Source of the DNA: Lytechinus pictus
Lineage: Eukaryota
DNA: 64,000 nucleotides
NCBI RefSeq assembly: GCF_037042905.1
Contig: NC_087255.1
Location: 26,288,001-26,352,000, forward strand
Reading direction: 5' to 3'
Shown: in pieces, positions 799-58,200 of the stretch
Position numbering within the stretch: the stretch's first letter is position 1
Layout: every line of letters starts with the position of its first letter
Notes under the pieces: generated by a model
What the model was told of the DNA's origin: nothing
What the model saw: only the letters and a program-made list of their open reading frames with translations
Databases searched by the model: none
Made by a program: the position numbers and the translations under genes

Positions 799-3700
799 AT
801 CCGGGTATATCCGCGTGCAAGCAATCTTGACAATGCCTTTGCCTTCATCGTCAAGGTTCCCTTTCAAGTACTGCTAATGAATGTCTTCAAAGACCTTCTC
901 ATAGTCTTCTGTGCTGACTATCATATATCACTCTTTAGCTGCGAGAGGAAAGACGGTCCGCCAAGTAAGTTATCTCTTTACGAAAGGTGACAATTTACAC
1001 AACACACTATACAAGGGCAGTACCATGGGTCAGGGGGGGGGGGCGGGGTAATTGGCCCCTTTTATTTTGAAGTAGTGAAAAAAGTACAAAAAAAGAGAAG
1101 AAATGGGGGAAAGTGAGAAAGAAAAGGGGCAAAAGAAGTCAGAAAAGTATTGAGAGATCAGAGCCATGTAACTCTGTAATGCTGCTATAATTCATTCATT
1201 AAGAAAAAGAATATGTCACCTCTAAGTCGTCTTGGCCCAAGTTTAGCTGGACTTCAGAATAAGGACCAGTACGGAAACAACATTTTGAAATCTTTGGCTT
1301 CCCATAATTTTAGCACAGTCTTTTATACATTGTGTGCTACATGTATATAACAACAAAGTCAATATTTGAGTGAGAGACTTGATTGAAATTGTTTTTATTT
1401 TTTTTATTCATCCTTTTTTTGCCTCAGGTCCTACAGCAACTCTTACCAGGATACAGGATCTTTCGCTTGCAAACTTTGTTCCTCATCCGTCCTCTCTCAT
1501 CTCACTCACCCTTACATCACTCAGGTCTGAATCAGGTATGTTCTTGACCTTATCTTAGAAAGAGTTGTGATCGATCCGATCAATCACATCTATGGACGGC
1601 CAGCAACGTCAACATCTATTAAGCATGTTTGTTCAAAATAATTTCTAACTATGATGTATTTTCATGCATTCATTGTTGCATTCATTGTTTTCTTGAAAAT
1701 TCACTTTGTTTCTCTTTATTTACAAAGGACATTGTGCAAATTTCCTGTAGAAAAAATTATGACACTGGTGGATTTCCATAGACTTACGATTGATTGGATC
1801 AATTGTAACTCTTTGTAAGACGGGGCCCTGGTCCTCTTAACACAAATCCAAGCCATTGATTGTTGGGCTAAGTTTTATTTGGTCATGCACAATAATCAGT
1901 GGAAACCATGGAAGGCAGCCCCATGATTATTTGCAAAGCTTTATGTTACAGGGTCCCCTTATCCCAAAGCCAAGCCTTTAATTGTACCTAGGCTTCATTT
2001 TCATGATTGATTGCACTGAGTGTTATGTGCAATCAATTGCCCTTGTTAGAAAGAATAGGATTTTCATTCTACTTTTTTTTTTTTGGGGGGGGGGGTAGTT
2101 TTACTGCACTCTCTCATGTGAAATGGAATATCTTTTCTAATTGGAGCAAAATTATCCCAATTTTTTAATCAGAAATGTTGGGAGGCCAATGGCCTGTATA
2201 AGGTAAACCATGCTGTTTGTACTAAAAAGAAGTTTGGTAGACGTTTAGTAGAATTGAATGAAATTGTGAAGCATTAACTGCATGATGATTTTCTTGTAAG
2301 TACCATTAGTTTGATCATAAATCAAATCGTTTCTCAGCTATCATGCATCTATTGCCAAGTATCGAAGGGTTGTATAGTTTTCTTCTTAATAGTCATTATT
2401 GACTGATAATTTTGATAACTTGCATGCTTTATTTTGAATTTTTCTTTGTTTTCAGTGTCTCCCAAGTCATTCAATCAGAGCAGCGAGGCCGAAAGTCTCA
2501 TCATCAATGTCGCTGGTCGTGTATTGATGCTTCAGAGAGATCGTACCAAAGCGCCCTCGCCCAACAACGATTACCATGATCGAAGGAAAACCAAAGATGC
2601 CGAGGTATGGAACATTGTGACAGACCAAGGGGGCCATTTCATGAATGTATTTTTAACTTGTCCATGACTGGAATATGTTCCCGTGTGGTAATTCAGCTAC
2701 ATAGGAATATATCACTTAGCACAAGAACAGGCAACCAGTCATGTATAAATTATATGAAACTTAAGAATAACTTTTAGGAAGTCATACTATATTTATGCCT
2801 CCGCCAGAATCAGTCAGTTGCTGGTGTCATTAATATGTCCGGATCCTCTTTTGACTTCTTTGAATACAATTGGTACTCAAGTTTGTAACCGTGATACAAT
2901 GTGGAGCCAGGAGAATGTGTCCTGAGCTCCCTCCTTGGTTCAAATAAACTATTGAGATCATCATTTGTTTTTTATTCACAGATCCCTTTTGTAGCGCCCA
3001 TCATTCTTGCCTCATCTGTAGAAAGTATGTGGACCACGTCCCGGTCTAGCGCCAGTAAACCTCATCTCATGGAATCACTCTGGCTGGGGTGTGGAGCCGC
3101 AGGAATGAAGGTACAGTACATAAGCAGAAATATTTATGTTTTCATATTTGTTTATTCTGCTAGTCCAACATCGAAAAGATATGATTGCGATGGTGATGAA
3201 TATATTTATCTGATTGCTTAAAAAAATGAATGCTTGTAAGTTAGGTAGTAAAGATAAATACATTCGCAAAGGGCAGAAGGGCAAGTGAGAATTGAACCCG
3301 GGTCACTGAATGGCAAGACTAGCATTTGTATGCTGTAAACAATCCCTTTAATTTGTTCATTCAGTATTCATAAGTATGGTGAATAAGTAGAATGATTAGA
3401 AATCATTGGAATATCTGCATGCAATGATATTGGCTTTTACAACCTTTACATGATGAGGAAACCAGGAGGTAAGATAGTTTCCTTTCTCAAATACATTTTT
3501 CACATCCTAATAAAGTAAGGAAAATAGAGAGTAGAAGAAAAAGAAAGAGTGAAGGAGGAAGAGAATCGGAATTAGCCGATGAAATTAGACTTGAAAAGAG
3601 AGTTGTAAGAAAGTGCTGTTACAATATTCTTGTTTTTTTTTGTTTTTATTTAGGTGTGGTTACCTCTGTTTCCAGACCGATCAGAGAAGTTACATCATAG

Positions 3701-6700: not shown

Positions 6701-9700
6701 GAGTGCAATGAACTTGAATGATCAATGAACAATGAAAAAGTGACTGCAACATACAATGAAAGTACATTGAACTTGATATTGTTTACAGGAATGTTTGAAG
6801 ACTGGTAACCTACAGACAGCAGCATCGTATCTCATCATTCTTCAAAACCTAGAGACTGTCAAAGCAAGCAGACATGTAAGTACATGCAGTATAGTTTTTT
6901 TTTTTTTTGGGGGGGGGGAGTTGCACCACTGAAATGGCATATTAGCTTTTGATTTTTTTTTTAGGATATGAAGTATTGTGGCAAAAGTATGTACAGTTTA
7001 TCTTTATCTTCTTGCTGAAACAAAACCACTATAATTTTGAAAATCAATTCCTCCAACTTATTTAAAACAGATTCATAACAATTAGCATTCTCCATTAAAA
7101 AGTATGTTTGTACACAGACACACAAATTTATGCAAAATGTAAGGGGAGTGTAAATATTATGAATTGTTTGATCAGCTCATGACCTTACACCTATTTTTAC
7201 CAATCTGTTTACAGAAATAAGAATTAATATTATTGCATATTGTGACATGGGTTGATTGTAAATAGTCAAATAAGATTTAAGCAGAGTTATAGAAGATCAT
7301 TTGCCAGTAGTTTTTGTCCCCAAATCCAATTTAGCATGCATCTGTTCTTGAAATGTTCAAAAGTTATGTTGTTATTTTCCTTCATTTCATCCAGCATGCA
7401 ACAATGCTTCTAGATGCAGCCCTAGAGCACAGTGAATGGTCACTGTGTCGCGATCTTCTCAGGTTCCTCCGTTCCATCGGATCAGGGGATCTCGATTCGC
7501 CCAGGCCCCCGCCCCCTCTTGCCAATCACCACATGTTTCCCCTGGGTGTGGGGAGGGGAACGCCAGCAGGCGTGACCAAGCCCAGGGGGAGACATGCTAG
7601 CCATAACACAAAGTCTGGTGGCTCTGTGGACAGGCAGACTGACCAGAATACAACAGAGAAAAGGTAAGGCATCATGACAATAATATTTTCTTTTTGTAAA
7701 ATATTTATTTAACAGTGGGGAAGTTCTTTGAATGAGTAAGATTTTACCACTTCAGGTTTGGACAATAAAATAGTTGACCGATAACAAGGAGTAGTAGACA
7801 TGGGATACATTTTTTCTAATGTGTTTGTCCTAATGTGTTGCATGTAACAAACTCATTTTATTCTTTTCTCACCCAGGAATTCTGTGCTTTCAAGGCAGAA
7901 CAGTGTCCCCGACCCCAGCATAGACGAGTACTACATTGATACCATACTAGCAAGACACGCTAGGAAGCTGCTGGCAGCTTACAGATTGAAAGAGTTAGGG
8001 ATCATGACGGGCTACCTAGATTTCAAACTTACATCATGGCTTGTTAGGGAAAGGTAAATTGGTTAGCTATCAGAAGAGTAACTTTGAAAAGTCTGAAGGG
8101 AAATGATTGTAATTTGATGTAGGAGAGCATGTAATGAACTTCTTTTGTTAAGATTTTGTTTCTAGTTTAGTAATAATTTTTGTTTATTAAGTGTAATAAA
8201 CCCCTGTTCATTCATGCCTTGCAATACTGCCAGTATTCCACATAAGTAAAATAGTTCTTTGCAATGGTGTTCGTTTATCAAACCTTAGGATGTTAAAGAA
8301 TTAATTTTTGACTTTTGCTTTTTATAGTCTGATATTTTCTTCCAATAACATGCCAAAAGTTAATTTTTTTAAAGTTTAGTGAAGCATCTAACTCAGTCTG
8401 CACTTGACATGCTTGCCTGCACAAGGGTTTCTACTGAGATAAATTAGATTTATAGATTCAGATTCAGATTCAGATTCAGATATTTTTATTGTCCAATTGC
8501 AATCAAGTACAAATGGAAATTCAATTTGTTCGCACAAAATAATTTAGAATATTACATGATACACACAGAAGATTACACGATACATATATTAAACATTATA
8601 CAAATCAACAAGAAAAGATAAGAGAAAGTAAGATAAAGGCAGTGGGGTAACATAATTTCAAGTATGGCTATTAAATGCACGAATTGAAACTGGAACAAAA
8701 GAATTTACGAAGCGTGAGGTTCTGCCGGGAAGGGATCTCAGACGTTTGCCTGACCTCATCAAATTATAATATTTATGAAGGGCATGGTTCTCATTGGTCA
8801 GGATCTCTTTGCCTTTTTCAAGGACTCTTCCTTCATTCTCGTCTACAAAGCACCCTTTTTCTTTTGTTATTTTAGAGGCTTGCTTTTCAACTCTTTCTAG
8901 TTTCTGTATGTCCTCTTTCCTACTTGCATGTATCCAAACAATTGAATTAAAAAGAAGTGCACTTTCCACCATTGCTTTATAAAAGACCTGCAATATCCTC
9001 TCTTGAACATGCGCGGTCCTAAGCTTTCGAAGGAAAAACATTCTACTTCGAGCTTTTGAAAGTGTGATCTTGGCTTGGGATATCCAGTTAAGTTTAGTGT
9101 CAATGGTTGTCCCTAGATACTTAAAACTATCTACTACTTCAATGGTAACACCGTCTAATACAATTGAATCTGGTTGTGGGGGAGCAATTCTGAAATCAAA
9201 AATAAGTTCTTTACACTTAGATGGGTTTATGAAGAGGTGGTTGTTTTTACACCACCTTGAGAAGCGTTCAATACTTCTGTGATAACTATCATCATCAGTT
9301 TCACTTTTCATCAGGCCTAGAATTACTGTGTCATCAGCGTATTTTAGTATTGTTACATTTCCGTCATTTGAGTTACAATCATTAGTATACAAGATATACA
9401 TGAGTGCTGATAAGACGCATCCTTGGGGGGCACCTGTATTTACTATAATCTCATCAGACATAGTATTCTGAACTCGAACACATTGGGTTCTAAATGTTAA
9501 AAATTCTACTAGCCAAAGTACAATTTTAGGGTGAAGGTTAAATTCATTCAGTTTATCAACAAGAATGTGTGTCTGTATCGTATTGAAAGCCGAAGAAAAA
9601 TCTACGAAAAGGGCCCTAGAATAACACCTCAGTTTGTCTGTATGTTGAGCTATTTCATGTACTAATGTCAGCACAGCGTCCGTAACTGATTTCTTCGGTT

Positions 9701-12700
9701 GGTAGGCAAACTGATGTAAATCTATAACAGGGGAAACTACTGGGAGGATGAGTTTCATTATGATCCTCTCAAAACATTTCATCACTATCGATGTCAGGGC
9801 AACAGGTCGGTAGTCATTTAATTCAGACGCTTTGTTTGTTTTGGGGACTGGTATAACTTGCTTTCTTCCAACAACTAGGTAAGTCACCTTTTAGAAGCGA
9901 GTGTTCAAAGAGGTTCGCGTAGGGGATGGCTAATTGGTGAGCACAATATTTAATAATCTTTCCCGGGATATGATCTGGCCCCATTGCCTTGCGGGGGTTA
10001 ACACGGCGAAAAACGTTAATGACCTGTTGAATGCTTATTTCATGAATGTGCGGTAAGGCAGGTACCGTACGTAACACGTACATGTGACCCTTTTTATTGT
10101 GTATCTTTATCACTCTTCTTGCCCCTATCATTATGAGAGAAAATGATATCAATAGTCCGTTTTTGTATATTGCTTTGTAGGCTTCAACCATTATTACCCC
10201 AGTCATCAGATATTTGATTGCCCGCACAATATGTATGCACTTTCTCCACTTGCTTGGAATCAAACCACGTTTCATATTTTAATCATTAATCTTTCTTTAC
10301 ACAGGATGAGAGTAGCTCGTGTAGAAAGCTTTGTCGATGCATTGAAGAGACTACACTCTGATTTCAATTGGCCCCTTCCTGTCATTGGAAACCCCTTGAG
10401 TTCAAAGAGCTGTAAGTACACCTACATTCATCTCAAGTCCATACTCTCTAGAGAATTCTCTACCATGTCTATGAATGTTTTTGTAATTTGCAGAAAGGGT
10501 TGTGCTTGTGCTCTGCTTCGTACTGAACTTGATGATATAAAGATTTCTAAGATTATATTAAAAAAGATGTCATCTAAATTCTGATTCTAGACATGTATTC
10601 CTCACTGCACTCTGGTTACATACTTTTATGTCAATCAATTAATTTCACTTTTTCCCCAATTTTCTTGGTTGTAATTTATTGAAAACTCTGAAAATTGAAT
10701 GTAGTTAGATGATGAGGTCCTTTCATATTTTTTTCAAGAGCAATTCTATGAAAATTCTAAAAAAGGAAGGAAATGTAATAAAACTTCTTTTTGTCCATTT
10801 AAACATCAGTTTCACTGTATGTTTCTTAGTGATTTTAGTGGGGGGATGCTTGTTAATCACATCAGTGTGTGAACTTAGACAGATAATGTGGAGACATTTT
10901 ATAAAAACTGAAATACAGGTGATTACTAAAGCAGGTTTGACTGTATTTGATCTTATCTCTCTGTTTCTTTACAGTGCAAAGGACATCCACTCCAACGGGT
11001 ACCCTCAACGGGATGCACCCCCATACGGAGTCCCCGACCTCCCCTGTGGACCTTATCCCCACCACCAAGTTTGCAGGTATCGGCAGTATACCCCCTAAGC
11101 CTGCCACGCCCACCCCCATAGGAAACAGACCAATCAACGGTAATCACCCTGCTGGTGGGCTAACCCTCAAGTTCTCCAGGACTCAGAGCATGCTGTCTGA
11201 AAGCACTGGCAGTGATACGAGGACCGAGGAGGCTGTCCTTAAACACCCGTCGGCAAAAGGTAAATCTTCTAGATGTATTTGAGGGTAACTGTCGCAAGTT
11301 GTTTATGTCTAATTTAGGATACAGACACAAAGCACACCATTGTTTAGTCTTGTGTAAGATAAGAAAAATATTGCATTTTAAAGCTTTGCTTGAATATTTC
11401 TGTTAATATAATATCTTTCAATATTTTATTGTATGAATTCATTTTCACCCAATAATGTAGAGCATATTTGGAAACCTTATGGAATTTGTAAAGTAATTGT
11501 TATTTTGCATGAGTTTCAGGCCTCATGATCAAAGTTAAAGGTCAATTAGGGTGAAAGAACTTTGATCATCGTGTGGTATCAAAATAAAAAAAACTCAAGC
11601 AAGGTTATGACTTTAAATTTTCAAGATAATATTGCAAGATTGCCAGAGGCATTCCACTTGTCTCTACCATGAGCATAGTATTATTAACTTCCTAGTAGCT
11701 AGATTTTCAACTACTTTGTGAGTTGAAATGACTACATTCTACAGTTGATGATTATAAGTTATACATATCATGTTGACTCCCCCCCCCCTCCTCTACCAAA
11801 TGATCTAGCTTTAAGAATCTCCTTTAACAATAAAAGGACATGATATAGTATTCTAATAACATGATCTATGTGTCCTCTAGGTTCTGATGAAACCAGTGTT
11901 GGTACAACAGAAGCCTCAGAGGGAAGCCTCCTGGGAGAAGGAGACAACAATCTTGATGATAGCTTCTGGTCAAACAACGTCACAGTAGATGAACTAGAAC
12001 AGTTCTTCAAGGAAGTCATTTGGCATGGACCAAAACAATCAGAGAGAGAACTCAGGTAATTGCATTTCCATATTGGTCTGAACCTGGTAGCATTAGGGCT
12101 GTTCCTGTTACCAAGGTGGCAGCTCTTCATTTCGATTTCAAAGCTGATATTTCACACAACTATGTTGTGTCTATAACAACTGTAGGCTTACATGATTTTT
12201 ATAGACATTTACTATTTTTGATGAGGTAAAGAATTAAAAGTCGCTTTGTCCATGTAAGCATAGTCTGATATTGTCCACAACACTGAATTCTTGGAGGACA
12301 AGTGAAATGTTTAAATTGGGTCTATGATAATTCTTATTAATCAGGACCCATTTAACACAAATTTTGTATTCATCATTGATTGCACATCATTATGAATGCA
12401 ATAATTTATGAAAATTGGTCTTGTTACCAATTTTTGAGCTTTGCATTATTGGACCTGGGCTGTGAAGGTGAGGTAAATGTGAGGTTGAATTAATTCAATA
12501 TTACTATCCAGAACCCTGGTGATACCAGCTAGCAGGACATTCATCCAGCAAATTACATTTATTGGATCACTTTTATTGCAGGTATCTTTTGAAGATAGTA
12601 TTAGAAGCTAGCTGTCTGGAGTGGGGCCTCCTCATCTCCATCATCCTCAGGGACAGAGCAGCGTTGAGTCAAGTGGTGAACATAGCTAGCCTTGGGGAAA

Positions 12701-20685: not shown

Positions 20686-23600
20686 ATGTTTTACGGAATA
20701 ACCATCTTTGTTCTGAATTTCATACAAATCGGTAAGCCCTACATGATATACATTCACATTCATTAATGTGATTTAAAACGATGAATGCATTCGTAATTCA
20801 AATTGTAATAGTGATATATATCATGTGCAATCCATTTCTATTTGATATTAAGTGAATGAATAAAGCAGAACTTACACTCTGAATAAACTTCTCCTCAAAT
20901 TTGAATACAAACTTGGACTTTAAAGTTACTTGAGAAAAAAATAAGTGTCTTTTACTGTAAACGAATATAGTATTTTTCAAAAACAAAAATTTAACTTAGT
21001 GGCCCTTTATTTTCAATATAGATTGTGGCCCTATGATCGAGTATCCACTGTTTGAGATAGATTGCATTTAGAAAGAAGGTTCAGTGATCTATCATGTCTT
21101 CTGTAAATGTGGATACTTTTTTAATGACATGATCGACGCGTAAAACATATGTAGAGACTGTTATTAAGCTTTAACATGCTAGACAAATGGAGATTATCGG
21201 ATCGAAAGACGATCATTATTTATCTATTTTTTATATTTTGTAAGACATCATATTCCGTTCCTCTCCATCTCTCTGTTTCTCCCCCCCCCCCACCCCTCTC
21301 CCTCTCTCTCTCTCCCACACGCAGTATCTAGCCAGCCATCGGCCGACCAATGGCATATTTTTGAAGATGCCCTATATCTTGTGGATAACGACACACGATT
21401 AAATTATGACCAGGCACAGTCGTACTGCCAAGAACTCGGAGGCAATCTCGCCCGGATAGATTCCGATGAGATACAGGTAATCTCTATGAAATTTGAAACT
21501 GGAAATGATTTGAAGGGACGTCATTTTTTTTCTCAATAAAAAAGGAGTATATCGTAGCAGTCGTACAAACAGAGATATATACATTACTCCTATTTCATGC
21601 AATTTCTTCTCCCGATGTCATTTTTTTCTGGATGGGGGGGGGGGTGCTTAAATAACCATAGTGGTTGATTAAATTAAGATGGTGCACTTTCCTCTTTTCT
21701 CATATTATAGGTAAACTTGATAATATCGTTTTCCATACAAGTGTTAAAAATACATATTAATTATAATCTAACCACTCGTGGACCCATCCTATAATGAACA
21801 TGTAATTCCTGACCAATCCGTCTGCTTTAAGATTAAAGCATCGTCTATGTTTTTAGTTAAAGTTTCAATCGCGTAATAATATAATAGTATAAAAGTCTTT
21901 CAAAGCGTGTTTTAAGTATTTGATATGTTTTTCATTTCTTCCCCATACAGTCTTTCTTGACAGATATCGTTAGTCCAGGTTTCGTACCAACACGATGTTT
22001 CTTTATTGGTGCTAACGACATAGAAGACGAAGATGAATTTAAGTGGCAAGACGGGACCCAAGTCCGGTAAGACATCATGACGTCAAAGCAAGTTCAGAGT
22101 CGAGTCCATCTTTGTGAATCACAAATCGAATCCGTCTCGGACTCAACCTGTGGGTTGAATCATGGATCCTATACTAATGGGATCCATGGTTAAATCAACG
22201 GATTAATCCATGCATTTTGCAAAATGAATTCCGGCCATTGTGGTCTAATGTTTTAGAATCACCTCTGACTCAACCGTGGGTTAAATCATGGGTCGTACTA
22301 ATTATTGGGATCCATGGTTAAATCAACGGATTAATCCATGCATTTTGCAAAATGAATTCCGGCCATTGTGGTCTAATGTTTTAGAATCACCTCTGACTCA
22401 ACCGTGGGTTAAATCATGGGTCGTACTAATTATTGGGATCCATGGTTAAATCAACGGATTAATCCATGCATTTTGCAAAATGAATTCCGGCCATTGTGGT
22501 CTAATGTTTTAGAATCACCTCTGACTCAACCGTGGGTTAAATCATGTGTCGTACTAATTATTGGGATCCATGGTTAAATCAACGGATTAATCCATGCATT
22601 TTGCAAAATGAATTCCGGCCATTGTGGTCTAATGTTTTAGAATCACCTCTGACTCAACCGTGGGTTAAATCATGGGTCGTACTAATTATTGGGATCCATG
22701 GTTAAATCAACGGATTAATCCATGCATTTTGCAAAATGAATTCCAGCCATTGTGGTCTAAATGTTTTAGAATCACCTCTGACTCAACCGTGGGTTAAATC
22801 ATGGGTCGTACTAATTATTGGGATCCATGGTTAAATCAACGGATTAATCCATGCATTTTGCAAAATGAATTCCAGCCATTGTGGTCTAAATGTTTTAGAA
22901 TCACCTCTGACTCAACCGTGGGTTAAATCATGGGTCGTACTAATTATTGGGATCCATGGTTAAATCAACGGATTAATCCATGCATTTTGCAAAATGAATT
23001 CCAGCCATTGTGGTCTAAATGTTTTAGAATCACCTCTGACTCAACCGTGGGTTAAATCATGGGTCGTACTAATTATTGGGATCCATGGTTAAATCAACGG
23101 ATTAATCCATGCATTTTGCAAAATGAATTCCAGCCATTGTGGTCTAATGTTTTAGAATCACCTCTGACTCAACCGTGGGTTAAATCATGGGTCGTACTAA
23201 TTATTGGGATCCATGGTTAAATCAACGGATTAATCCATGCATTTTGCAAAATGAATTCCAGCCATTGTGGTCTAAATGTTTTAGAATCACCTCTGAGATA
23301 CTTGAAAAATAATTACATAGTATTATGATAATATTTTAGATTCAGAAGATTTGGCAGGGGCGGTCAGTGGGTGATTTCAAGTCGGTGTTGGTGTTGGAAG
23401 CACAATGTGGATAATCCATATAACACAAAATTTACTTTTCAGGACCATCTTCACTTTGTGTTTGGTGTTATTTTCGTGTAAATATTGACCTAACACCAAC
23501 ATCAACACTGGTTTCAAAATCAACCATCGGTTGATGATTTTCCAAAGACAGAAAAAAGGGGGACGAAGGAAAAACGAAATTTGAGGAGCCAGATTCGATA

Positions 23601-26600
23601 TGTTTGATTGTTTGTTGGTTAAATTTTAAGCACCTTTCATTGGGAACGCAAACAATTTTGTCTGTAGGTAATAGTCAAAATACCATATCGCCACCTTTAT
23701 CAAATTTGTTTATTTCTGGAAAATTCCAAAGGAATTGTACAACAAAATAGAATCGATGACCTGTAACAATATGATTATACAACGGTTGGATAGCCCCATT
23801 TCAGAGCAATTGACTCAAATGGTCATGTTTTCTATTACTTTAGCTCGGTGGTTGGTTCCGAGGTCACTGGCGGAAATTCAAAACAATTCCTGAGATCCCA
23901 AAATTCATCGAAAAATATATGTATTGTTCAATATGTATGACATTACATGGACTGAGTCTGATAGTGAATAAAACTGCAAGGATCCCCACTATCGTAGCTT
24001 GATGGAGATAATGACAATGTTATTCATGGAAATATATGAATTCTCCAAACAACCCACAAGTAAGATAAAACCACATTCCATGTAATAGGCTAATGCCCTC
24101 GCAAATCATCCAGTATTTCGACTTAAAATGGTCGTGTGTGCTGACGGTCAGAAATATTTTTTCCTTTAATTATTTAAAACTTTAATTATTATTATTATTA
24201 TTCTATTTGACTGACATTTGACTGACTCCGAGCAGAACAATATCAACTTTGTAAAATATATATTCATTTAACTCTTTATTGTTTATCAGAATTTTCGATT
24301 ATTGTGTGGAAAGGTAATTGAAAAAGCCATTAATTATACTCTCCCTAAATACCTTATCATAACATATTTACTATCTTCTCTCGATTATATGTTCATTTTA
24401 TGATTAGATATGATGGATGGTCACCTGGGCAGCCTGACGACACAGAAGGGAACCGAGATTGCGCCTGTCTATGGTCCTCCAAAAATCCCAGTAGACATGG
24501 GCAATGGGATGACACCAACTGCTTTAATCGTATGAACTTCATATGTCAGAAGAGACTGTGTGAGTCAAGTCTTTTCTAACCTATGGGTTAGGGTTGGGCG
24601 CGTACGTGTGGGTGTGTGTGAGTGAGGATGTGCGTATGTGTGCGTTCTTATGTGTAGAAGGTGCGTGTGGGTGTTGCTGGGTGTGTGTAGTGGTGAAGGC
24701 ATGTGAATTTGTGGGCGTGTGGGTGATGGTCGGTATGTAGTGGTGAATGGGTGTGTGATGTGTATAGGTAGGTGGGTGAGGGTGGATGTGTGTGGGGGAC
24801 TGTTGATATACGATTGGGGTTTCATATATTGTCGAAGCTTAGTATTGGTTATGATTTGAATTGTTTTTATTTGATGTGTTCCACCTTTTTCATCTTGCAA
24901 TAGGCTAGTCAATTTTACATCAAAGGTTTATTACTAAGGATTATCCTTTGCTACAGATAATTTTACACTGACGAGTTCTCGGAGCAATCCAGGATCGGGC
25001 TATGTTACCTGCGCTGTCGACATCGTAGACGACAACGAAATCCTGCCACCCGATGATATCAGATTGTCAGTTGGAAAAACTTTGGCATCGACGAGATCGA
25101 TTCCTTACTCATCGACGCGCGTCATTGGTCAATTTCGTGACAGTACGTTTGAAATAGACAATCTCGAAGAAGACGACATGATATTCTGTCATGTTGGGGA
25201 CTTGTCAAGGAACACGACATCATTCTCAAGAATTCAATTTCTTCCGATTAATTTTTATGGTAATGACTCACTGATGTCTGATTGTAGATCGAAATGTTTA
25301 ATGAAATTGACGATGAATAGGAAATTTGTCATAACTATTTTCTTATACTCCATCCATTCAACAAATGAATAAAAAAAGAGAAGCATTTGTGACATAGAAA
25401 GGCAACATGTGTTGTAATTTCCCATACGTCATACATTTGATGATTTCGTAGATTTCATAGATTCGGAGAAAACAAGGAAATTGAAACGAAAACATTTCCC
25501 ACATCCATCCAGATAGTTTGCCTGAGAATACATACTCACTTAAACTTGATAGCTAATGCAAAAGAAGTTACATTACATGTGGCCCGATTCTTATTTGCTC
25601 CTATTGATCGTTTAAGGTCTACCGCGCCATAACGATTTAATGACTGTTCCACCCTGACAGCTCTACCCGGACTGACGTTCTCTCCAGCTGTGGACGACAT
25701 CGGTTCAACCTCCCTCACTGTCACCTGGAGCTCCTGGATACCATGTCTTGATACCGGTGAAGGGCCAGTGGTCAGTTACCTGGTCTACGTACAAACAACG
25801 GGTAAAGAATTGATAAATGCTGGTGAGGTCGACTCGGATGAGGGAGAGGGCGCACTTCATGGAACAATGGAGCTCGCTTTGACTGAATTGGAACCAGGAA
25901 CTGAATACAATATCAGTGTTTCTGCTGTCAGAGAAGGTGTTGGTGGAGAGGGACCGAGGAGTCCATTTGTGTCTGTTACGACGAGCATTGGTAGGTGAAT
26001 ATTACACTTTATTGTCTCTTTTATCCTTTTCTTACTTCGGTATTTAAAACGTCGACTAAGTCGTTGCCCGTCTGCATTGTTCAATAGAAAGATTTGACTA
26101 TTTATTCAAACAAGAGATAGTTTGATATGTTTTGGTGATTTCAAGTTGGCTTTTATTGATATCAATTATTTCTTAAATATGTTTGAACGTATCTTAGCTG
26201 AAGATCATTCTGAAGTAGGAGCTAGTAGAGTGGAGGTGACAGCAACATGAAAACAAGTAAAAAAATAATACTTTTTAAAATATCCCAAAAGCAACCTTAA
26301 AAGCAATAGAAACTAAATGTTTCCTAAAGTAACATAAACACTTGAAGAAGATCTACATGCCTTGTTGAATGATCATTTACACGATGAGACCAGGCTTTAT
26401 TGTAACAAGGAGCTAGTTAGGTACACCTAAAATAGCGTTACAAAATTAATTGAATACATTAATTTTTTGTGATTTCTATCTGATCTTTTGAAATTTCAGT
26501 AAGCGCACGTCGTTCTGCGATATTAGAAAACGGGATTCTGCCGTGGATATTCTTTGGAGTGTCATTAGCGGGAAATGTATTACTATTGGTCGTCATCATT

Positions 26601-51000: not shown

Positions 51001-52809
51001 ACTTCAGGGAATGGTCGTACGCAGCAAGGGGGAAGGGGGGGCACATTCGCGATCTGCTATTGTGAAAAACAATTTTTTTTCCCTTAACATTTCATGAAAA
51101 CTATGAAAAATTTGCAAATGTGAGATGTGCACCAAATTTTCGAGTCCTGCCCCCCCCCCCCCGGAAATATTAACTGCGTGTGGTCATGCAAAATGGCATG
51201 ACTGGAAATCCTACATTTTGAAAAGAGCATTTGACAGGGTCAGACTTTACCCCTTTTTCAACATTTTCTTTTATGGCGCCGGTGAAGTGCAAAAATATGT
51301 GCGCCGCTCGGCAGTGCGCCCCCCCCCCTTCGCCAAAAGCTGGATCCGCCTATGGTAAGGACTGTGTATTGCATTATTCCGAGTATGATGTTTCTTTCAT
51401 GTTTCAGGCAGTGCCTTTCAGGAAGACTCTCGTCGCGTTTGGATTGCTTTATTTCTGGTTTCATTTCTCGGAAATCTCATTCTTCTCGCTGTTCTTTTGA
51501 TTATATGGTAAGTATGAAAACATGACACCGGCCCACAGGGATAGAAACAAATAGAGATTTCGCTGACCTTTATTTTCTATCATATTTGTCCCTAAATTTG
51601 AAATAAAGTCTAATGCGGAAATTTACAGTAAAAAAATATTGATAAACTGCTTGTTAATACTAGAATCATGTGAATTCAATTAGAGTAAGGTTTGCATGTA
51701 GTGTTGGTGAATCTATGCTGGCCTACTTTGACGTATGCGAGCGAAGAGGCAAAGATCTAAATGGGTATGTGACAAAAAAGTGACATATCAACCGAAACAG
51801 ATTACTTTATGTGGTACAAAAAAAAATGATAACCTCTACCGGACGAAATTTGACAGAAAAATGCGAATGCTGCTATGAATGGTGGCTAATTAATCAACGT
51901 ACTAGTCGGTGTCAATGTAAATTACAAAAAATAGCTCTTTGATCGATTATCATAAGTTTTTACACTTGTTCCCTTTTGTCAACGTAGGCCAGCAGGACCA
52001 ATACTAGATGCCTTACATTTTATCATGATTCTGGTATCAAGATTGTTTAGCTATAAATTTCCGGTTGGTCTTTCACCGCTTCGTGTAGGCCTACTTTCCG
52101 TTTCGTCTCACCCCCGCAAATGGAAAATATAGTACTCCATGTTCGATCGTCTACAACCAGATCGTCTACTTACCATTTGAGTATATTGCCATAAAACCTA
52201 TTTACCTTCTTGTCCTAATTCTATTTAGGCTATACAAATTTCGTCTTACTGGTCTAACACAACATGTATATAATTATGGTTATATAAACTCTTTATGAAC
52301 CAAATTTTCAGATAAATTAAGAAATATAATTTCAGCTAAATGAGGCAAAAGGTGGGCATATTTCATATCAACTTCCGTTGCATTTCAAGTAATCACTCCA
52401 CAATTATTTACAGATTTTTTTAAAATAGATATTTCTTTAATATTTCCATGTATTTCTGTTATCATGGGATTCTGCCCCATCCTTCAAACTTACAGTATAC
52501 TATTAAAAGAAAATCATCCCGATTCTTTTTACAAACAGCAAGTGGAAGCAGAAGAAGCAGGACCTGTCTCACTTACGTGCTGCCCCAATAAGAGCAGGGG
52601 GAGGAGGAGCAAGAGGAAGCGACCCAAAGAGCTCCCATTACGAGCTACCTCAACAAAGTGGAGTCAGGCACGAATACCAGGGTCTTAAGGTGACTGGGAG
52701 CAGCGCTGATGAATACCAATGTCTTAAGATGACTGGAAGAAGCGCTGATGAGCAGGTATACGCCGACATCGAAGATCCAGAAAAAAACTACATCAATATC
52801 CCTTCTTAA
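43818..52809 (+). CDS. Receptor B: paralog of receptor A (C-type lectin + Ig-like + FN3 + TM + ITAM-bearing tail), exons 2-8 (~500 aa with candidate exon 1)
   Basis: Exons: 43818-43969, 44448-44563, 45383-45534 (WAPSQPDN..DCACLW..GQWDDDRC..NFICQ), 46620-46925 (Ig-like), 47698-48033 (FN3, LTGLDPGTEYNISVSAVREG), 51408-51507 (TM VWIALFLVSFLGNLILLAVLLII), 52539-52809 (tail ending VYADIEDPEKNYINIPS*). Intron phases match receptor A, and the three CTL exons have the same sizes (152/116/152). Confidence 0.87.
44971..45050. repeat. (ACT)n/(GCT)n microsatellite
   Basis: Read directly from the sequence. Confidence 0.9.
45793..45955. mobile_element. MITE with GGGGGGCGTTTCAT termini, CTG target duplication
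   Basis: CCTGGGGGGCGTTTCATCAA ... TTTCATGAAACGCCCCCCTGG. Confidence 0.8.
46367..46590. mobile_element. CACTG-ended (EnSpm/CACTA-like) MITE
   Basis: Ends CACAGTAAAAAAC / GTTTTTACAGTG, with an internal inverted pair TAAGCCAACCACTC.AAC / GTTGGAGTGACTGGCTTA around TTTAAAC repeats. Confidence 0.55.
47313..47556. mobile_element. hAT-type MITE with perfect 8-bp TSD
   Basis: TTTAGTGG|CAGGGGCGGAAATC ... GATTTCTGCCCATG|TTTAGTGG. Confidence 0.85.
48830..49670. repeat. Complex minisatellite built from ~17-20 bp AATC(G/A)GCGCC units
   Basis: Recurrent AAGAATAATCAGCGCC / ATCTGGTTATAAATCGGCGCC / ACCTAAATCTAAATCGGCGCC / GAGTCTTAACCGGCGCC blocks. Confidence 0.9.
50090..50751 (-). mobile_element. Partial inverted copy of the 27495-29211 element
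   Basis: Reverse complement of 27495-27600 plus 28470-29000, ending GGATCGACGCCCCTA. It lacks the nested foldback MITE at its (TA)n site. Confidence 0.75.
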
Positions 52810-55259: not shown

Positions 55260-58200
55260 TTATGTCCTTTTGACGGTGATGATGGCGATTATCAAATCCA
55301 TGATGATCGGAGAAATGACGAGACATGATTCAATTAAACTGGCAACTCCAAGTATACAGAACATGATATCAAATGATTCGGTGGCATTGTACGCAGCACC
55401 TGTTGAAAACAAATGATACAAAAGATTCTTAAATTCATTACAATGATGCATATCTTTATCGTCCAATAACCATGATAACTTAAAACATAAAAAATACTAT
55501 GAAAAATATCTCACATTCCCTGTAGTGTTTTATAAAAAAAATGTTTGTAAAGTTCTCGTGACCATTTGAGCCCAATTGTTTTTATTGAGTTTTCAAGAAA
55601 CTCAAATCTTAAGATGTTAAGTAATTACAATCTAGAGGAGTGAAAAAGTAGCAATATTTTTGAAAGTTTGTACGCAATGGTACAATGAAAAATGATGTAT
55701 TTCTTAAGAATTTGTAATTACCGTACATATAATTGTTTTAATAGTCAAATTGATTTGTTCCTTGTCAAACAGCTCAATATGCTCCAATACACAAAACGTC
55801 TAAATATATTCTAAAGAACTCAGTCATATATTATATAGAGGACATTTTGGCAATATGCTATTTGTTGTAGTACTAATCCGAAAGTGGAAGTGCTTAGAGG
55901 AAACAAAAAAATTTAATAAACATCCCCCGTTCCCGATGATTTTTGCTTTCATTTATATTCGTCTTTTCGTAACCAGAATACATGGAAAGGGGATTAAAAC
56001 ATAATGTCGTAAACCGGAATCCATATTTCGAATGAATACACCATTGGGTTATGAAAAGTTGACATTATCTTCAAGAAAGAATGGACGTCAATGCATGCTT
56101 CATAGTTTTTCTGTTTAAAATTCAATTTTCTTTCTGTACCTTCGCCTTAACTGGGTTCTCTTAAAAAAACAAGACAAACATGGTACCAAAAAAGAAAAAA
56201 AGAGAAAACTAGATTTAAAAAATCAAATCTTTTGTGACATACCAATGATAAAACCGGCGAATGACTCTCCTAAACCAAAGATCAGTGATACTAAAATCAT
56301 TGCAGATGGAAATCTTTCTTCTGGGACACTGCTCTTGGAAAGCAGTGTAGCACTGATGACCTTCACCCCCCCTGCAAAGGCATTCACGGCCGCTAAACAG
56401 CCAAGAACGAGGAAACGCTTGGTGAAGGAATTGTAAAAGTACGCCGCTGCCGACAGGATGCAGACCAAACTGTAGATGATCTGTGGTCTAATGTTGAATC
56501 GGGCAGAAAGGAGTCCCATGGTGAGTCTTCCAGAGATGTTCGCAGTCCCACCAACGGTTGCAAGTAAGACTGCTCTGTCGGGAAGGATACCCTTGGCTTC
56601 GGCATTTGGGATCAAGAATACAATCCAACCATAGTAGCTGACGGCAGAAGCCACCTCGGCCAGGCAGAATATGGTGAAGCGAGGGTATTCATAGAGGAGT
56701 TTTAGGTCAAATGTATCCAGAAACATCTTTCTTGCGATCTTGATGATAGAATGGAAGAACCCATCTTCATTCCAACCATCTTTCACCCCGTCACCACCAC
56801 CACGACGACCACCACCACCCCCACGACCATCACCATCACCACCGCCATCGTAATCATTACCATCGGCGTCAACACCATCTTCACTTCCGGGACCAAACGC
56901 ATCTCGTTCATTTATCAAGGATACTGTTAATTCGGGGTCTTCATTAACCTGTGATGAGTGTGATTTTGCCGATCTGACCTTTGGTTCAGCATGCTGATGA
57001 TCACTGGTCATCATAAGCAACGCCGTTACACAGGAGTGTAGGTTCAAGGCCCCTATGACAAGAATAGCTCCTCGCCAGGAGTAAACCTCGTCGAGAAGTT
57101 CTGTAAGTAATGGGAGTGTCATCATACCAACACCACTGCCGAGGAGGACAATGGTAGAGGCAATCTCAAAGTGATCTGGAAAGTAATAGATCACACTGAT
57201 CTGGGCAGGAAGGATGACTACGCTATAACCAAACCCTGGTAATGAACAGAATAGAGGTAACAATATTATTAAGTTTTATGTTCTCAGTGTTGCCACTCAT
57301 ATTCGAAATACTCTCTCCTTGAAGAGTTAGATATAGTTTTGTAAAGACCATCCTCTTCCTTAAATTTGCTATGATAAGACTATTACGTCTACGTTAAGTG
57401 TACTTTACAACACTATGTACGGTACAAACTGTCATAAGGCTAAATTTTGGAATTTTTAGGAGCCAAGATATGTTTAGTATATTGGGGTCATAAAAACGAG
57501 GGAGCGGAGTGATCGGGCGAGAGCTATTAGGTTTTGAAAGTAATGCGAAATCGGGTTAATTTAAGCATTCAAATGCGTTCAAAGATTAATTCGTTTAGAC
57601 ATTAGATCAGTGTTTTGATATTTCAGATTTGATAAGTTTTGTGTGTGGGGGGGGGGGGGGTGAAGCAAGTGATGTTTGTACACCCCACCGTCAGTTGATT
57701 CACCAATAAAAGAATAATGCATTTGAATGGGTTCTAGTTTAACCCACAAAACGGTTAATTCCCTCCAAGAAGTTTATCAAAATTTTGATATTGGTCGATT
57801 AATGTCAATAACAAATAAAAAAACATTATAATGATTATACTGACCAAAAAAAATCGTTCAATCAGTTATTCAAATATTTGGACGATATTAGCATCAGCAT
57901 TTAATTTAGGTAAGTTCTGAGTAGAACACTGATCTTGAGTATTCCTTGCAATATTATCCGCTCTTTGTCCAGGAGAACTTTGCTGAAAAGAATACACAAC
58001 TACAGTCCTTTTGAGGACCTATACTAGCAGGGGTTCTCAAACTACGGCCCGCGGGCCGGATCCGGCCCGCGGAGCTTCTCAATCCGGCCCGCGAGACTCT
58101 GCTGGGTTTTTTTAATCACTTTTAAGTCACAATATGAATCATAGCTCAATATGATTACATTGTGTATCCATGAAAAAGTAATAAAAGTAATGACAGTCAA

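What the first reader, a model, noticed from the sequence alone, without database searches (positions are those of the whole stretch)
20686..52809. Tandem pair of kinase-less C-type lectin-Ig-FN3 receptors with ITAM-type tails: candidate undescribed invertebrate immune receptor family
Seen: two paralogous 8-exon genes with identical exon phases encode signal peptide - one CTLD - one atypical Ig - one FN3 - TM - a ~75-90 aa tail with five tyrosines and no catalytic domain. The ORF track catches only fragments and misses both tails' reading frames. Known: ITAM/hemITAM signalling through Syk is the hallmark of vertebrate myeloid C-type lectin receptors (Dectin-1, CLEC-2, FcRgamma-coupled Mincle), but those are type-II proteins without Ig or FN3. 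I know no characterised type-I CTL-Ig-FN3-ITAM family. Inference: this is an independently assembled glycan-sensing activating receptor family, expanded by local duplication.
Basis: partly seen in the sequence, partly recalled or inferred. Interest (0 to 1): 0.9.

Follow-up and report, generated by a model that had tools for sequence, protein, structure and literature searches.

The report
Sea urchin lectin receptor gene pair
Two neighbouring, transcribed sea urchin genes encode membrane proteins with a sugar-binding-type domain outside the cell and a short tail with four strictly conserved tyrosines; they look like enzyme-less signalling receptors, are listed in databases only as "uncharacterized", and the claimed immune ITAM motif is clear in only one of the two.

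Summary
The window is Lytechinus pictus chromosome DNA. It holds two tandem paralogues, RefSeq LOC129271085 and LOC129271086, both named "uncharacterized protein". Each has 8 exons with identical phases and encodes signal peptide, C-type lectin domain, Ig-like domain, FN3, TM and a 77-90 aa tail with no catalytic domain.

- **Gene 1:** RNA-seq joints confirm exons 2-8, and a read overhang confirms exon 1.
- **Assembly gap:** it lies inside intron 1 of gene 2 and touches no coding frame.
- **Middle domain:** it folds as an Ig constant-type sandwich (pLDDT 83, Z 8-9).
- **Nearest relatives:** the Ig-FN3 module is otherwise found only in the membrane-proximal part of sea urchin receptor tyrosine phosphatases. 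These carry a C-type lectin domain and a Tie2-like ectodomain.
- **Tail:** 4 of 5 tyrosine columns are invariant across 9 proteins from 3 species, against 3 of 72 other columns.

A strict ITAM occurs in Lytechinus gene 2, partly through a 39-bp duplication, and in one S. purpuratus paralogue. Gene 1 has none. The family-wide pattern is YE[VL]P, YxxL, Yxx[I/M], YxN, which reads as a multi-SH2 docking tail. Immune function and glycan binding are untested. I found the family only in camarodont sea urchins, and no paper describing it.

The parts
20686..20731 (+). Gene 1 (LOC129271085) exon 1: start codon and signal peptide, ends in phase 1
   Evidence: RNA read and contig overhang at the exon 2 acceptor matches 20701-20730; GT donor
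21325..21476 (+). Gene 1 exon 2: first part of the C-type lectin domain
   Evidence: RNA joint 21476|21951 GT..AG in 4 runs; Lectin_C
21951..22066 (+). Gene 1 exon 3: middle of the C-type lectin domain
   Evidence: RNA joints on both sides
24408..24559 (+). Gene 1 exon 4: end of the C-type lectin domain with the QPD and WDD motifs
   Evidence: RNA joints; a minor alternative donor at 24557 in one contig; motifs
24957..25259 (+). Gene 1 exon 5: Ig-like domain (two Cys 59 residues apart), one exon
   Evidence: RNA joints; AF2 pLDDT 83; Ig constant-type matches at Z 8-9; no Pfam hit
25661..25990 (+). Gene 1 exon 6: FN3 domain, one exon
   Evidence: RNA joints; fn3 E 3.6e-12
26500..26608 (+). Gene 1 exon 7: stalk and transmembrane helix
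   Evidence: RNA joints; hydrophobic stretch in the translation
26740..26971 (+). Gene 1 exon 8: cytoplasmic tail (YEVP, YEGL, YSEA, YISM, YVNT) and stop; the 3' UTR runs on past 26999
   Evidence: RNA joint 26608|26740; contig continues about 420 nt beyond 26999; motifs
38639..38708 (+). Gene 2 (LOC129271086) exon 1: start codon and signal peptide; the donor reads GA in this assembly
   Evidence: Matches the N-terminus of RefSeq P0020 and of the L. variegatus orthologue P0042; sequence
40786..41490 (.). Assembly gap (two N runs) inside intron 1 of gene 2, flanked by trinucleotide repeats and followed by a LINE reverse-transcriptase fragment (41650-42600)
   Evidence: N runs; exon positions; reverse-transcriptase-like ORF
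43818..43969 (+). Gene 2 exon 2: first part of the C-type lectin domain
   Evidence: tblastn to gene 1 plus AG/GT sites and the same length; equals P0020
44448..44563 (+). Gene 2 exon 3
45383..45534 (+). Gene 2 exon 4: QPD and WDD motifs
46620..46925 (+). Gene 2 exon 5: Ig-like domain
   Evidence: 45% identical to gene 1 exon 5
47698..48033 (+). Gene 2 exon 6: FN3 domain
   Evidence: fn3 E 2.3e-9
51408..51507 (+). Gene 2 exon 7: stalk and transmembrane helix
   Evidence: Only candidate with the right phase and strong splice sites; equals P0020
52539..52809 (+). Gene 2 exon 8: cytoplasmic tail (YELP, YQGL, YQCL, YADI, YINI) and stop
   Evidence: held at 0.76-0.86 in transcript-type contig sets
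52672..52751 (+). 39-bp tandem duplication (2.1 copies, 87% match) inside gene 2 exon 8 that adds a second YQxL motif
   Evidence: present in both Lytechinus species and absent from the S. purpuratus tails

Best explanation
The region holds a tandem pair of transcribed, sea-urchin-specific genes for enzyme-less type-I membrane receptors. Each ectodomain has one C-type lectin domain of QPD type, one divergent Ig constant-type domain and one FN3 domain. The Ig-FN3 module derives from the same stock as the membrane-proximal module of sea urchin lectin/Tie2-like receptor tyrosine phosphatases. The short cytoplasmic tail is a phosphotyrosine docking platform. Inferred mechanism: ligand binding at the lectin domain clusters the receptor, and a Src-type kinase then phosphorylates four conserved tyrosines. 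These tyrosines then recruit SH2 proteins: a Crk/Nck-type partner at YE[VL]P, a Grb2-type partner at YxN, and possibly a tandem-SH2 kinase of Syk/Shark type at the YxxL...YxxI pair. A strict ITAM is present only in gene 2. Shown: gene structure, expression, domain folds, homology and conservation of the tyrosines. Inferred: ligand, phosphorylation, SH2 partners and biological role.
For: RNA-seq joints and strand for gene 1. Both models equal RefSeq proteins. Lectin_C and fn3 score above cut-off. Both QPD and EPN variants occur across the family. The middle domain models at pLDDT 83, and its best matches are all Ig constant-type domains at Z 8-9. Ig-FN3 is 31% identical (E 1e-24) to the L. pictus phosphatase LOC129271718, whose relatives match the Tie2 ectodomain at E 1e-42. 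In the tail, 4 of 5 tyrosine columns are invariant against 3 of 72 others, Fisher p 1.3e-4, and two of those three others are motif residues. A TM helix with a basic stop-transfer stretch is present in both. The genome carries many SH2 genes. These include an SH2, an ankyrin-like start, a second SH2 and a tyrosine kinase in series at C16:2.41-2.45 Mb.
Against: There is no evidence of phosphorylation, of any SH2 partner or of any ligand. The canonical WND calcium/sugar motif reads WDD in every member, and the Glu before the Cys is R in gene 1. YxxL and YxxI also fit YxxO endocytic sorting signals. The tissue of expression is unknown because the runs are coded. The Syk/Shark-type gene is only a candidate: one transcript is not shown, and the kinase fragment is not closest to Syk or ZAP-70.
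Confidence: 0.55

Rival explanations
1. One reading: a dedicated ITAM receptor family that signals through a Syk-type kinase as an activating, glycan-sensing immune receptor, a type-I analogue of Dectin-1 or Mincle/FcRgamma.
For: Gene 2 carries YQGL-x9-YQCL and YADI-x6-YINI, both within the ITAM consensus, and both are conserved in L. variegatus. One S. purpuratus paralogue has YDDI-x7-YVNI. A YxxL-x12-Yxx[I/M] pair recurs across the family. A tandem-SH2 kinase candidate exists in the genome. Sequence divergence is fast and S. purpuratus has at least 7 loci, as in sea urchin immune families. ITAM signalling has precedents in invertebrates (PMC9546547).
Against: Gene 1 and its orthologues have no ITAM within x6-9. 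Their pair is spaced x12, and in Lytechinus the second motif ends in M. At the last tyrosine the conserved residue is N at +2, not L/I at +3 (T, S, I or M occur there), which points to a Grb2-type site. One of gene 2's ITAMs is a recent 39-bp duplication. There are no data on immune cells or on induction.
Confidence: 0.15
2. An endocytic or scavenger lectin receptor. The conserved YxxL and YxxI motifs are YxxO sorting signals for clathrin adaptors, and the protein takes up glycosylated ligands, like the mannose receptor family.
For: The closest solved relatives of the lectin domain are MRC1, PLA2R, Ly75, MRC2 and the IgY receptor, at E 1e-33 to 1e-18. The proteins are type-I with a short tail, and two invariant tyrosines sit in YxxL and Yxx[I/M] contexts.
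Against: The other two invariant tyrosines (YE[VL]P and YxN) do not fit YxxO, yet they are equally conserved. The acidic residues around the tyrosines are typical of kinase substrates. There is a single lectin domain, and no FxNxxY or dileucine motif.
Confidence: 0.18
3. A partner or counterpart of the related receptor phosphatases. The short receptors and the long CTLD/Tie2-like phosphatases share Ig-FN3 modules, associate through them, and the tails are regulated substrates, forming a paired receptor system.
For: The only detectable relatives of the Ig-like domain, among 1.84 billion representative proteins and in the own genome, are these phosphatase-type genes.
Against: The link rests on homology alone. 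The genes lie megabases apart or on another chromosome. No binding or co-expression data exist, and I ran no complex prediction.
Confidence: 0.1
4. Decaying or non-functional duplicates, or an annotation artefact.
For: The donor of gene 2 exon 1 reads GA in this assembly. RefSeq also lists a truncated isoform of gene 1 without TM and tail.
Against: Both reading frames are intact. Gene 1 is spliced exactly as modelled, with no reads for the truncated form at the reporting threshold. Orthologues with the same architecture exist in three species, and tail residues are selectively conserved.
Confidence: 0.02

Closest known systems
Sea urchin CTLD/Tie2-like receptor-type tyrosine phosphatases (L. 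pictus LOC129271718; S. purpuratus 'RPTP alpha/epsilon-like' models, LOC105442673)
   Same: N-terminal C-type lectin domain (25% identity). The same unusual Ig-like domain followed by FN3, with the same exon boundary (31% identity, E 1e-24). Type-I topology.
   Different: The phosphatases insert two Ig domains and EGF repeats that match the Tie2 ectodomain (E 1e-42), and they carry one or two PTP domains. The pair lacks both and has a tyrosine-motif tail instead.
Vertebrate ITAM/hemITAM C-type lectin receptors (Dectin-1, CLEC-2, Mincle with FcRgamma)
   Same: A C-type lectin domain combined with tyrosine-based signalling and no enzyme domain. Gene 2 has ITAM-consensus motifs.
   Different: Those are type-II proteins without Ig or FN3, with one hemITAM or a separate adaptor chain (general knowledge). 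Here the topology is type-I, there are four conserved tyrosines, and a strict ITAM is absent from gene 1. There is no sequence relationship beyond the generic lectin fold.
Draper/CED-1/MEGF10-type engulfment receptors and Hydractinia Alr proteins (invertebrate type-I receptors with ITAM tails)
   Same: Type-I, enzyme-less receptors in invertebrates with YxxL/I pairs. Syk/Shark-type kinases are the expected readers (PMC9546547). Alr proteins also combine Ig-like and FN3-like folds.
   Different: Their ectodomains are unrelated (EGF repeats in Draper, V-set Ig in Alr) and carry no lectin domain. Here the conserved YxxL-Yxx[I/M] pair is spaced x12, outside the x6-9 consensus.
Mannose receptor family (MRC1, PLA2R1, LY75, MRC2)
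   Same: The closest solved sequence relatives of the lectin domain (E down to 1e-33). Type-I proteins with short tails that carry tyrosine motifs.
   Different: They have eight to ten lectin domains plus CysR and FNII domains, and no Ig or FN3. Their tails serve endocytosis (general knowledge).
Insect Contactin (C-type lectin domain + Ig + FN3; recalled from memory, not checked here)
   Same: An invertebrate surface protein that combines a C-type lectin domain with Ig and FN3 domains.
   Different: It has six Ig and four FN3 domains, is GPI-anchored, has no cytoplasmic tail, and functions in septate junctions.

Membership tests
ITAM-bearing receptors | Yxx[L/I]-x(6-9)-Yxx[L/I] in the cytoplasmic tail (consensus as given in PMC9546547) | tested here: inconclusive
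   Met in gene 2 (x9 and x6), in its L. variegatus orthologue and in one S. purpuratus paralogue. Not met in gene 1, its orthologues or most S. purpuratus members, where the pair is spaced x12.
ITAM-bearing receptors | The motif is conserved among orthologues and paralogues | tested here: not met
   The tyrosines are invariant. At the last one, however, the conserved residue is N at +2, while +3 varies (T, S, I, M). One of gene 2's ITAMs comes from a lineage-specific 39-bp duplication.
ITAM-bearing receptors | A Syk/ZAP-70/Shark-type tandem-SH2 kinase is encoded in the genome | tested here: inconclusive
   An SH2 with an ankyrin-like continuation, a second SH2 and tyrosine-kinase exons lie in series at C16:2408632-2449605. 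The first SH2 matches SHP-2, SYK and ZAP-70 best. One transcript is not shown, and the kinase fragment is not specifically Syk-like.
ITAM-bearing receptors | Tyrosine phosphorylation and recruitment of the tandem-SH2 kinase | not testable with these tools
   Needs biochemistry.
C-type lectin-like domain proteins | CTLD fold with the four conserved cysteines | tested here: met
   Pfam Lectin_C at 73 and 69 bits against a cut-off of 22.6. PDB lectin domains match down to E 1e-33. The cysteines are invariant in the family alignment.
Calcium-dependent carbohydrate-binding C-type lectins | EPN or QPD motif plus the WND motif and a Glu at calcium site 2 | tested here: inconclusive
   QPD is present in both window genes, and EPN occurs in some paralogues. 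WND reads WDD in all nine aligned proteins. The Glu position is R in gene 1, Q in gene 2 and E in one paralogue.
Immunoglobulin superfamily | Ig beta-sandwich with the B-F disulphide | tested here: met
   Two invariant Cys lie 59 residues apart. The AF2 model has pLDDT 83 and eight strands. The top 30 or so structural matches are almost all Ig constant-type domains at Z 7.6-9.0, and all Foldseek hits are Ig folds, though weak at E 5e-3.
Immunoglobulin superfamily | Recognisable by sequence profiles, including the conserved Trp in strand C | tested here: not met
   No Pfam Ig family matches. A profile search of PDB sequences finds nothing. There is no invariant Trp between the cysteines. Hence the label 'atypical'.
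Fibronectin type III | fn3 profile match above the curated cut-off | tested here: met
   46.8 and 37.7 bits on the single exons, against a cut-off of 25.
Receptor tyrosine kinases / receptor tyrosine phosphatases | A cytoplasmic catalytic domain | tested here: not met
   The gene 1 transcript runs from the TM exon into the tail exon, stop codon and 3' UTR. Pfam finds no catalytic domain in either protein. The relatives that share the Ig-FN3 module do carry PTP domains.

The most novel reading that the evidence does not exclude
Camarodont sea urchins evolved a private receptor system from one stock of ectodomain modules. Short CTLD-Ig-FN3 receptors carry phosphotyrosine or ITAM tails, and long CTLD/Tie2-like/Ig-FN3 receptors carry tyrosine phosphatase domains. 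The two act as an activating/terminating pair on the same ligands or on each other. This would be a convergent counterpart of vertebrate paired immune receptors and of phosphatase-exclusion triggering.
Probability: 0.1. Interest if true: 0.8.

Novelty: new variant of a known kind. Interest (0 to 1): 0.5.

Why it matters
Enzyme-less receptors that signal through tail tyrosines are central to vertebrate immunity, but few are documented in invertebrate deuterostomes. This family is small (two genes in L. pictus), expressed, and has four sharply conserved tyrosines. L. pictus can also be bred and gene-edited in the laboratory. That makes a clean test of tyrosine-tail signalling, and of ITAM-like versus Grb2-type wiring, feasible in an echinoderm. 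The homology to lectin/Tie2-like receptor phosphatases also gives a concrete case of domain shuffling between catalytic and non-catalytic receptors. Nothing here shows an immune role yet, and the genes are already annotated, so the value is that of a well-defined candidate rather than a discovery of a new principle.

Tried and rejected
- **Exon 1 of gene 2:** my own scan for ATG, a hydrophobic stretch and a phase-1 GT donor failed, and a DNA alignment to gene 1's exon 1 region was uninformative. The exon was found through the RefSeq protein, and its donor reads GA.
- **First structure model:** a model of the middle domain from two sequences was too poor to use (pLDDT 63). It was replaced by the 17-sequence model.
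- **Spurious profile hits:** P0006-P0008 and P0011 are long, repeat-rich proteins. The three I scanned (P0006-P0008) carry bacterial surface-protein domains, and the matches look compositional, so I discarded them.
- **Fish look-alikes:** teleost 'mannose receptor-like' CTLD+FN3 proteins have two lectin domains, repeated FN3 and no Ig-like domain, so they are not this family.
- **Kinase near the phosphatase-type loci:** a motif scan of 20 kb at each locus found none. Protein models later showed PTP domains instead.
- **Syk search:** four tandem-SH2 loci had no kinase within 20 kb, apart from a Src-like one. The C16 candidate's kinase fragment could not be classed.
- **Exact-sequence lookup:** The look-up of encoding contigs found no record for P0020.
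- **Literature:** searches by gene identifiers, architecture, ITAM/Syk and phosphatases found no description of the family. Byrum et al. 2006, on sea urchin phosphatases, is not held.
- **Nearby kinase exon:** an intronless-looking tyrosine kinase exon 27 kb beyond the window is a ROR/Trk-type receptor exon on the other strand, and I judged it unrelated.
- **Complex prediction:** I did not run one, because unphosphorylated tails would not be informative.

Full report
**Where we are.** The window is Lytechinus pictus contig C11:26288001-26352000 of an 812-Mb assembly. I identified the species from exact or near-exact protein matches whose records sit on a contig of the same length. The DNA is AT-rich and intron-rich, with LINE fragments and satellites.

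**Gene 1.** Three-frame translation showed C-type lectin, FN3, transmembrane and tail pieces on the + strand. I laid two transcript-contig sets and two stranded RNA-seq runs of the same species on 21000-26999.
- All four runs gave the same GT..AG joints: 21476|21951, 22066|24408, 24559|24957, 25259|25661, 25990|26500 and 26608|26740.
- Depth in the introns was zero, and all reads had the orientation expected for a + strand mRNA.
- An overhang at the exon 2 acceptor matches 20701-20730, which is exon 1.
- One contig runs about 420 nt past 26999, so the tail exon is the last coding exon and is followed by a 3' UTR.

The spliced CDS is 1440 nt and 479 aa. It equals RefSeq LOC129271085 isoform X1. 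RefSeq also predicts isoform X3, which lacks the TM and tail. No joint for it reached the reporting threshold.

**Gene 2.** tblastn with gene 1 found exons 2-6 at 44-61% identity. Splice sites with the same phases fixed exons 2-8. The product equals RefSeq LOC129271086 isoform X1, 500 aa.

Exon 1 lies at 38639-38708, upstream of the assembly gap. The gap therefore sits inside intron 1 (38709-43817), and no reading frame crosses it. The L. variegatus orthologue, from a different assembly, has the same exon 1 to exon 2 continuity.

The donor after exon 1 reads GA in this assembly. A canonical GT in the same phase follows 38741. I could not resolve this, because the single read-laying run had been used on gene 1. 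Gene 2's tail exon is held at 0.76-0.86 by the same contig sets that carry spliced gene 1 mRNA. Exon lengths show identical phases in the two genes. The proteins are 47% identical overall.

**Domains.**
- Pfam finds Lectin_C and fn3 above cut-off in both proteins and nothing else.
- The lectin domains carry QPD. Among paralogues EPN also occurs. The WND motif is WDD in all members, and the Glu before the Cys is R in gene 1 and Q in gene 2. Sugar binding is therefore plausible but not assured.
- The 101-residue middle exon has two invariant cysteines 59 residues apart and no Pfam or PDB sequence match.
- With a 17-sequence alignment, AlphaFold2 gives an eight-strand sandwich at pLDDT 83.
- An exhaustive structural comparison ranks almost only Ig constant-type domains at the top: butyrophilin IgC, HLA-DM, PD-L1 IgC and beta-2-microglobulin, at Z 8-9, rmsd 2.4-3.3 and 79-93 aligned residues. 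Foldseek hits are weak but nearly all Ig folds.

Z 8-9 is only just above the tool's stated background. I therefore call the middle domain an atypical Ig-like domain, with moderate confidence.

**Relatives.** A profile of the Ig-like exon, searched against 1.84 billion representative proteins, returned 12 hits. Eight are genuine and are sea urchin proteins or unnamed ENA fragments that resemble them. The other four are long repeat proteins that I discarded.

Full-length searches found the family only in L. pictus, L. variegatus and S. purpuratus. S. purpuratus has at least 7 loci, several on one chromosome. E-values then drop sharply from 1e-102 to 1e-18, where generic fish lectin domains begin. 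All members are named 'uncharacterized protein' or generically.

In the L. pictus genome the Ig-like exon has only four other, distant copies. They belong to genes with a lectin domain, two Ig domains, EGF repeats, this Ig-like domain and FN3. The Ig/EGF part matches the Tie2 ectodomain at E 1e-42. Protein models of these genes carry one or two tyrosine phosphatase domains. The Ig-FN3 module of gene 1 is 31% identical (E 1e-24) to that of L. pictus LOC129271718, and the lectin domain is 25% identical.

The pair is therefore a short, non-catalytic offshoot, or sister, of a sea urchin group of lectin/Tie2-like receptor phosphatases. It is not a wholly independent assembly of domains.

**Tails.** I aligned the tails of 11 family members. 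Four tyrosines are positionally conserved in both paralogue groups: YE[VL]P, Y[EQ][GD]L, Yxx[I/M] and Y[VI]N.

In the 9-protein alignment, 4 of the 5 tyrosine columns of gene 1's tail are invariant, against 3 of 72 other columns (Fisher p 1.3e-4). Two of those three are the E and L inside the motifs. Overall tail identity between the two genes is only 30%. The tyrosine motifs are thus the constrained elements of the tail.

Against the ITAM consensus Yxx[I/L]x(6-9)Yxx[L/I] (PMC9546547):
- Gene 2 has YQGL-x9-YQCL and YADI-x6-YINI. The first arises from a 39-bp tandem duplication shared with L. variegatus.
- One S. purpuratus paralogue has YDDI-x7-YVNI.
- Gene 1 and the remaining members have none. 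Their YxxL...Yxx[I/M] pair is spaced x12.
- At the last tyrosine it is N at +2 that is conserved, while +3 is T, S, I or M. From general knowledge of SH2 specificity, this fits a Grb2-type site better than an ITAM half-site.

**Readers of such motifs.** The genome has at least 50 SH2 matches. At C16:2408632-2449605 there lie, in series, an SH2 exon that runs into an ankyrin-like motif, a second SH2 and tyrosine kinase exons. The first SH2 is most like those of SHP-2, SYK and ZAP-70. This is the layout of Shark, the insect ITAM reader (PMC9546547). I did not show a single transcript, however, and the kinase fragment could not be classed.

**Interpretation.** The best-supported reading is a non-catalytic, tyrosine-phosphorylated lectin-type receptor with a multi-SH2 docking tail. 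Gene 2 additionally qualifies as ITAM-bearing.

The rivals are:
- an endocytic lectin receptor that uses YxxO signals; the lectin domain's nearest solved relatives are mannose receptor family members;
- a partner of the related phosphatases.

Fast divergence (63% identity between Lytechinus and Strongylocentrotus orthologues) and copy-number differences are compatible with an immune or reproductive role, but they prove nothing. The tissue of expression is unknown.

**Novelty.** I found no paper that names these genes or this architecture. The genes are already in RefSeq as uncharacterised models. I rate the finding as a new variant of a known kind, namely enzyme-less tyrosine-motif receptors and C-type lectin receptors, and of moderate interest.

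Noticed in passing
window 23368-23406 (intron 3 of gene 1): A stretch of about 39 nt has very high RNA depth: up to about 1900 in contig sets, and over 100 raw reads. Overhangs differ on both sides and agree poorly with each other, and there is a 1-nt insertion polymorphism at 23381/23382. It looks like a short sequence shared with one or more abundant transcripts from elsewhere, not an exon of gene 1 (sequence).
   Followed up: partly
window 22136-23296 (intron 3 of gene 1): A 128-bp satellite with 9 copies at 98% identity. It produces a ladder of identical 53-aa ORFs in the ORF list.
   Followed up: no
window 48838-49601 (intron 6 of gene 2): A degenerate tandem array with a 41-bp unit and 103/123/144-bp higher-order periods. 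It is GC-richer than its surroundings.
   Followed up: no
window 41650-42600 (+) and 8658-10275 (-): LINE-type reverse transcriptase fragments. The first lies in intron 1 of gene 2, directly after the assembly gap.
   Followed up: no
window 38709-38710: The donor site of gene 2 intron 1 reads GA instead of GT. This could be a base error, an allele that disables the site, or a rare non-canonical intron. An alternative in-phase GT follows 38741.
   Followed up: partly
window 56223-57263 (-): A 346-aa open frame that looks like a multi-pass membrane transporter exon with a Gly/Asp-rich insert. This is a different gene on the opposite strand, downstream of the pair.
   Followed up: no
L026 (G000:C11:26377000-26382000), 1597-2739 (-), 27 kb beyond the window end: A single 380-aa exon holds a complete tyrosine kinase domain with a DYYR activation loop. 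It is the best PK_Tyr match in the genome, and by my reading of its motifs is probably the last exon of a ROR/Trk/MuSK-type receptor kinase.
   Followed up: partly
L003-L014 (G000 C11:29.31 Mb, C11:12.53 Mb, C19:8.43 Mb, C19:8.26 Mb): Four L. pictus genes combine a C-type lectin domain with a Tie2-like ectodomain (Ig, three EGF-type repeats, Ig, FN3). Protein models of this group in L. pictus and S. purpuratus carry tyrosine phosphatase domains. I could not find this receptor phosphatase architecture described in the papers held.
   Followed up: partly
window 26609 (exon 7 donor of gene 1): Four reads of one RNA run continue from exon 7 into a sequence that resembles the start of exon 8 but differs from it. 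This may be a second allele or an unplaced copy.
   Followed up: no
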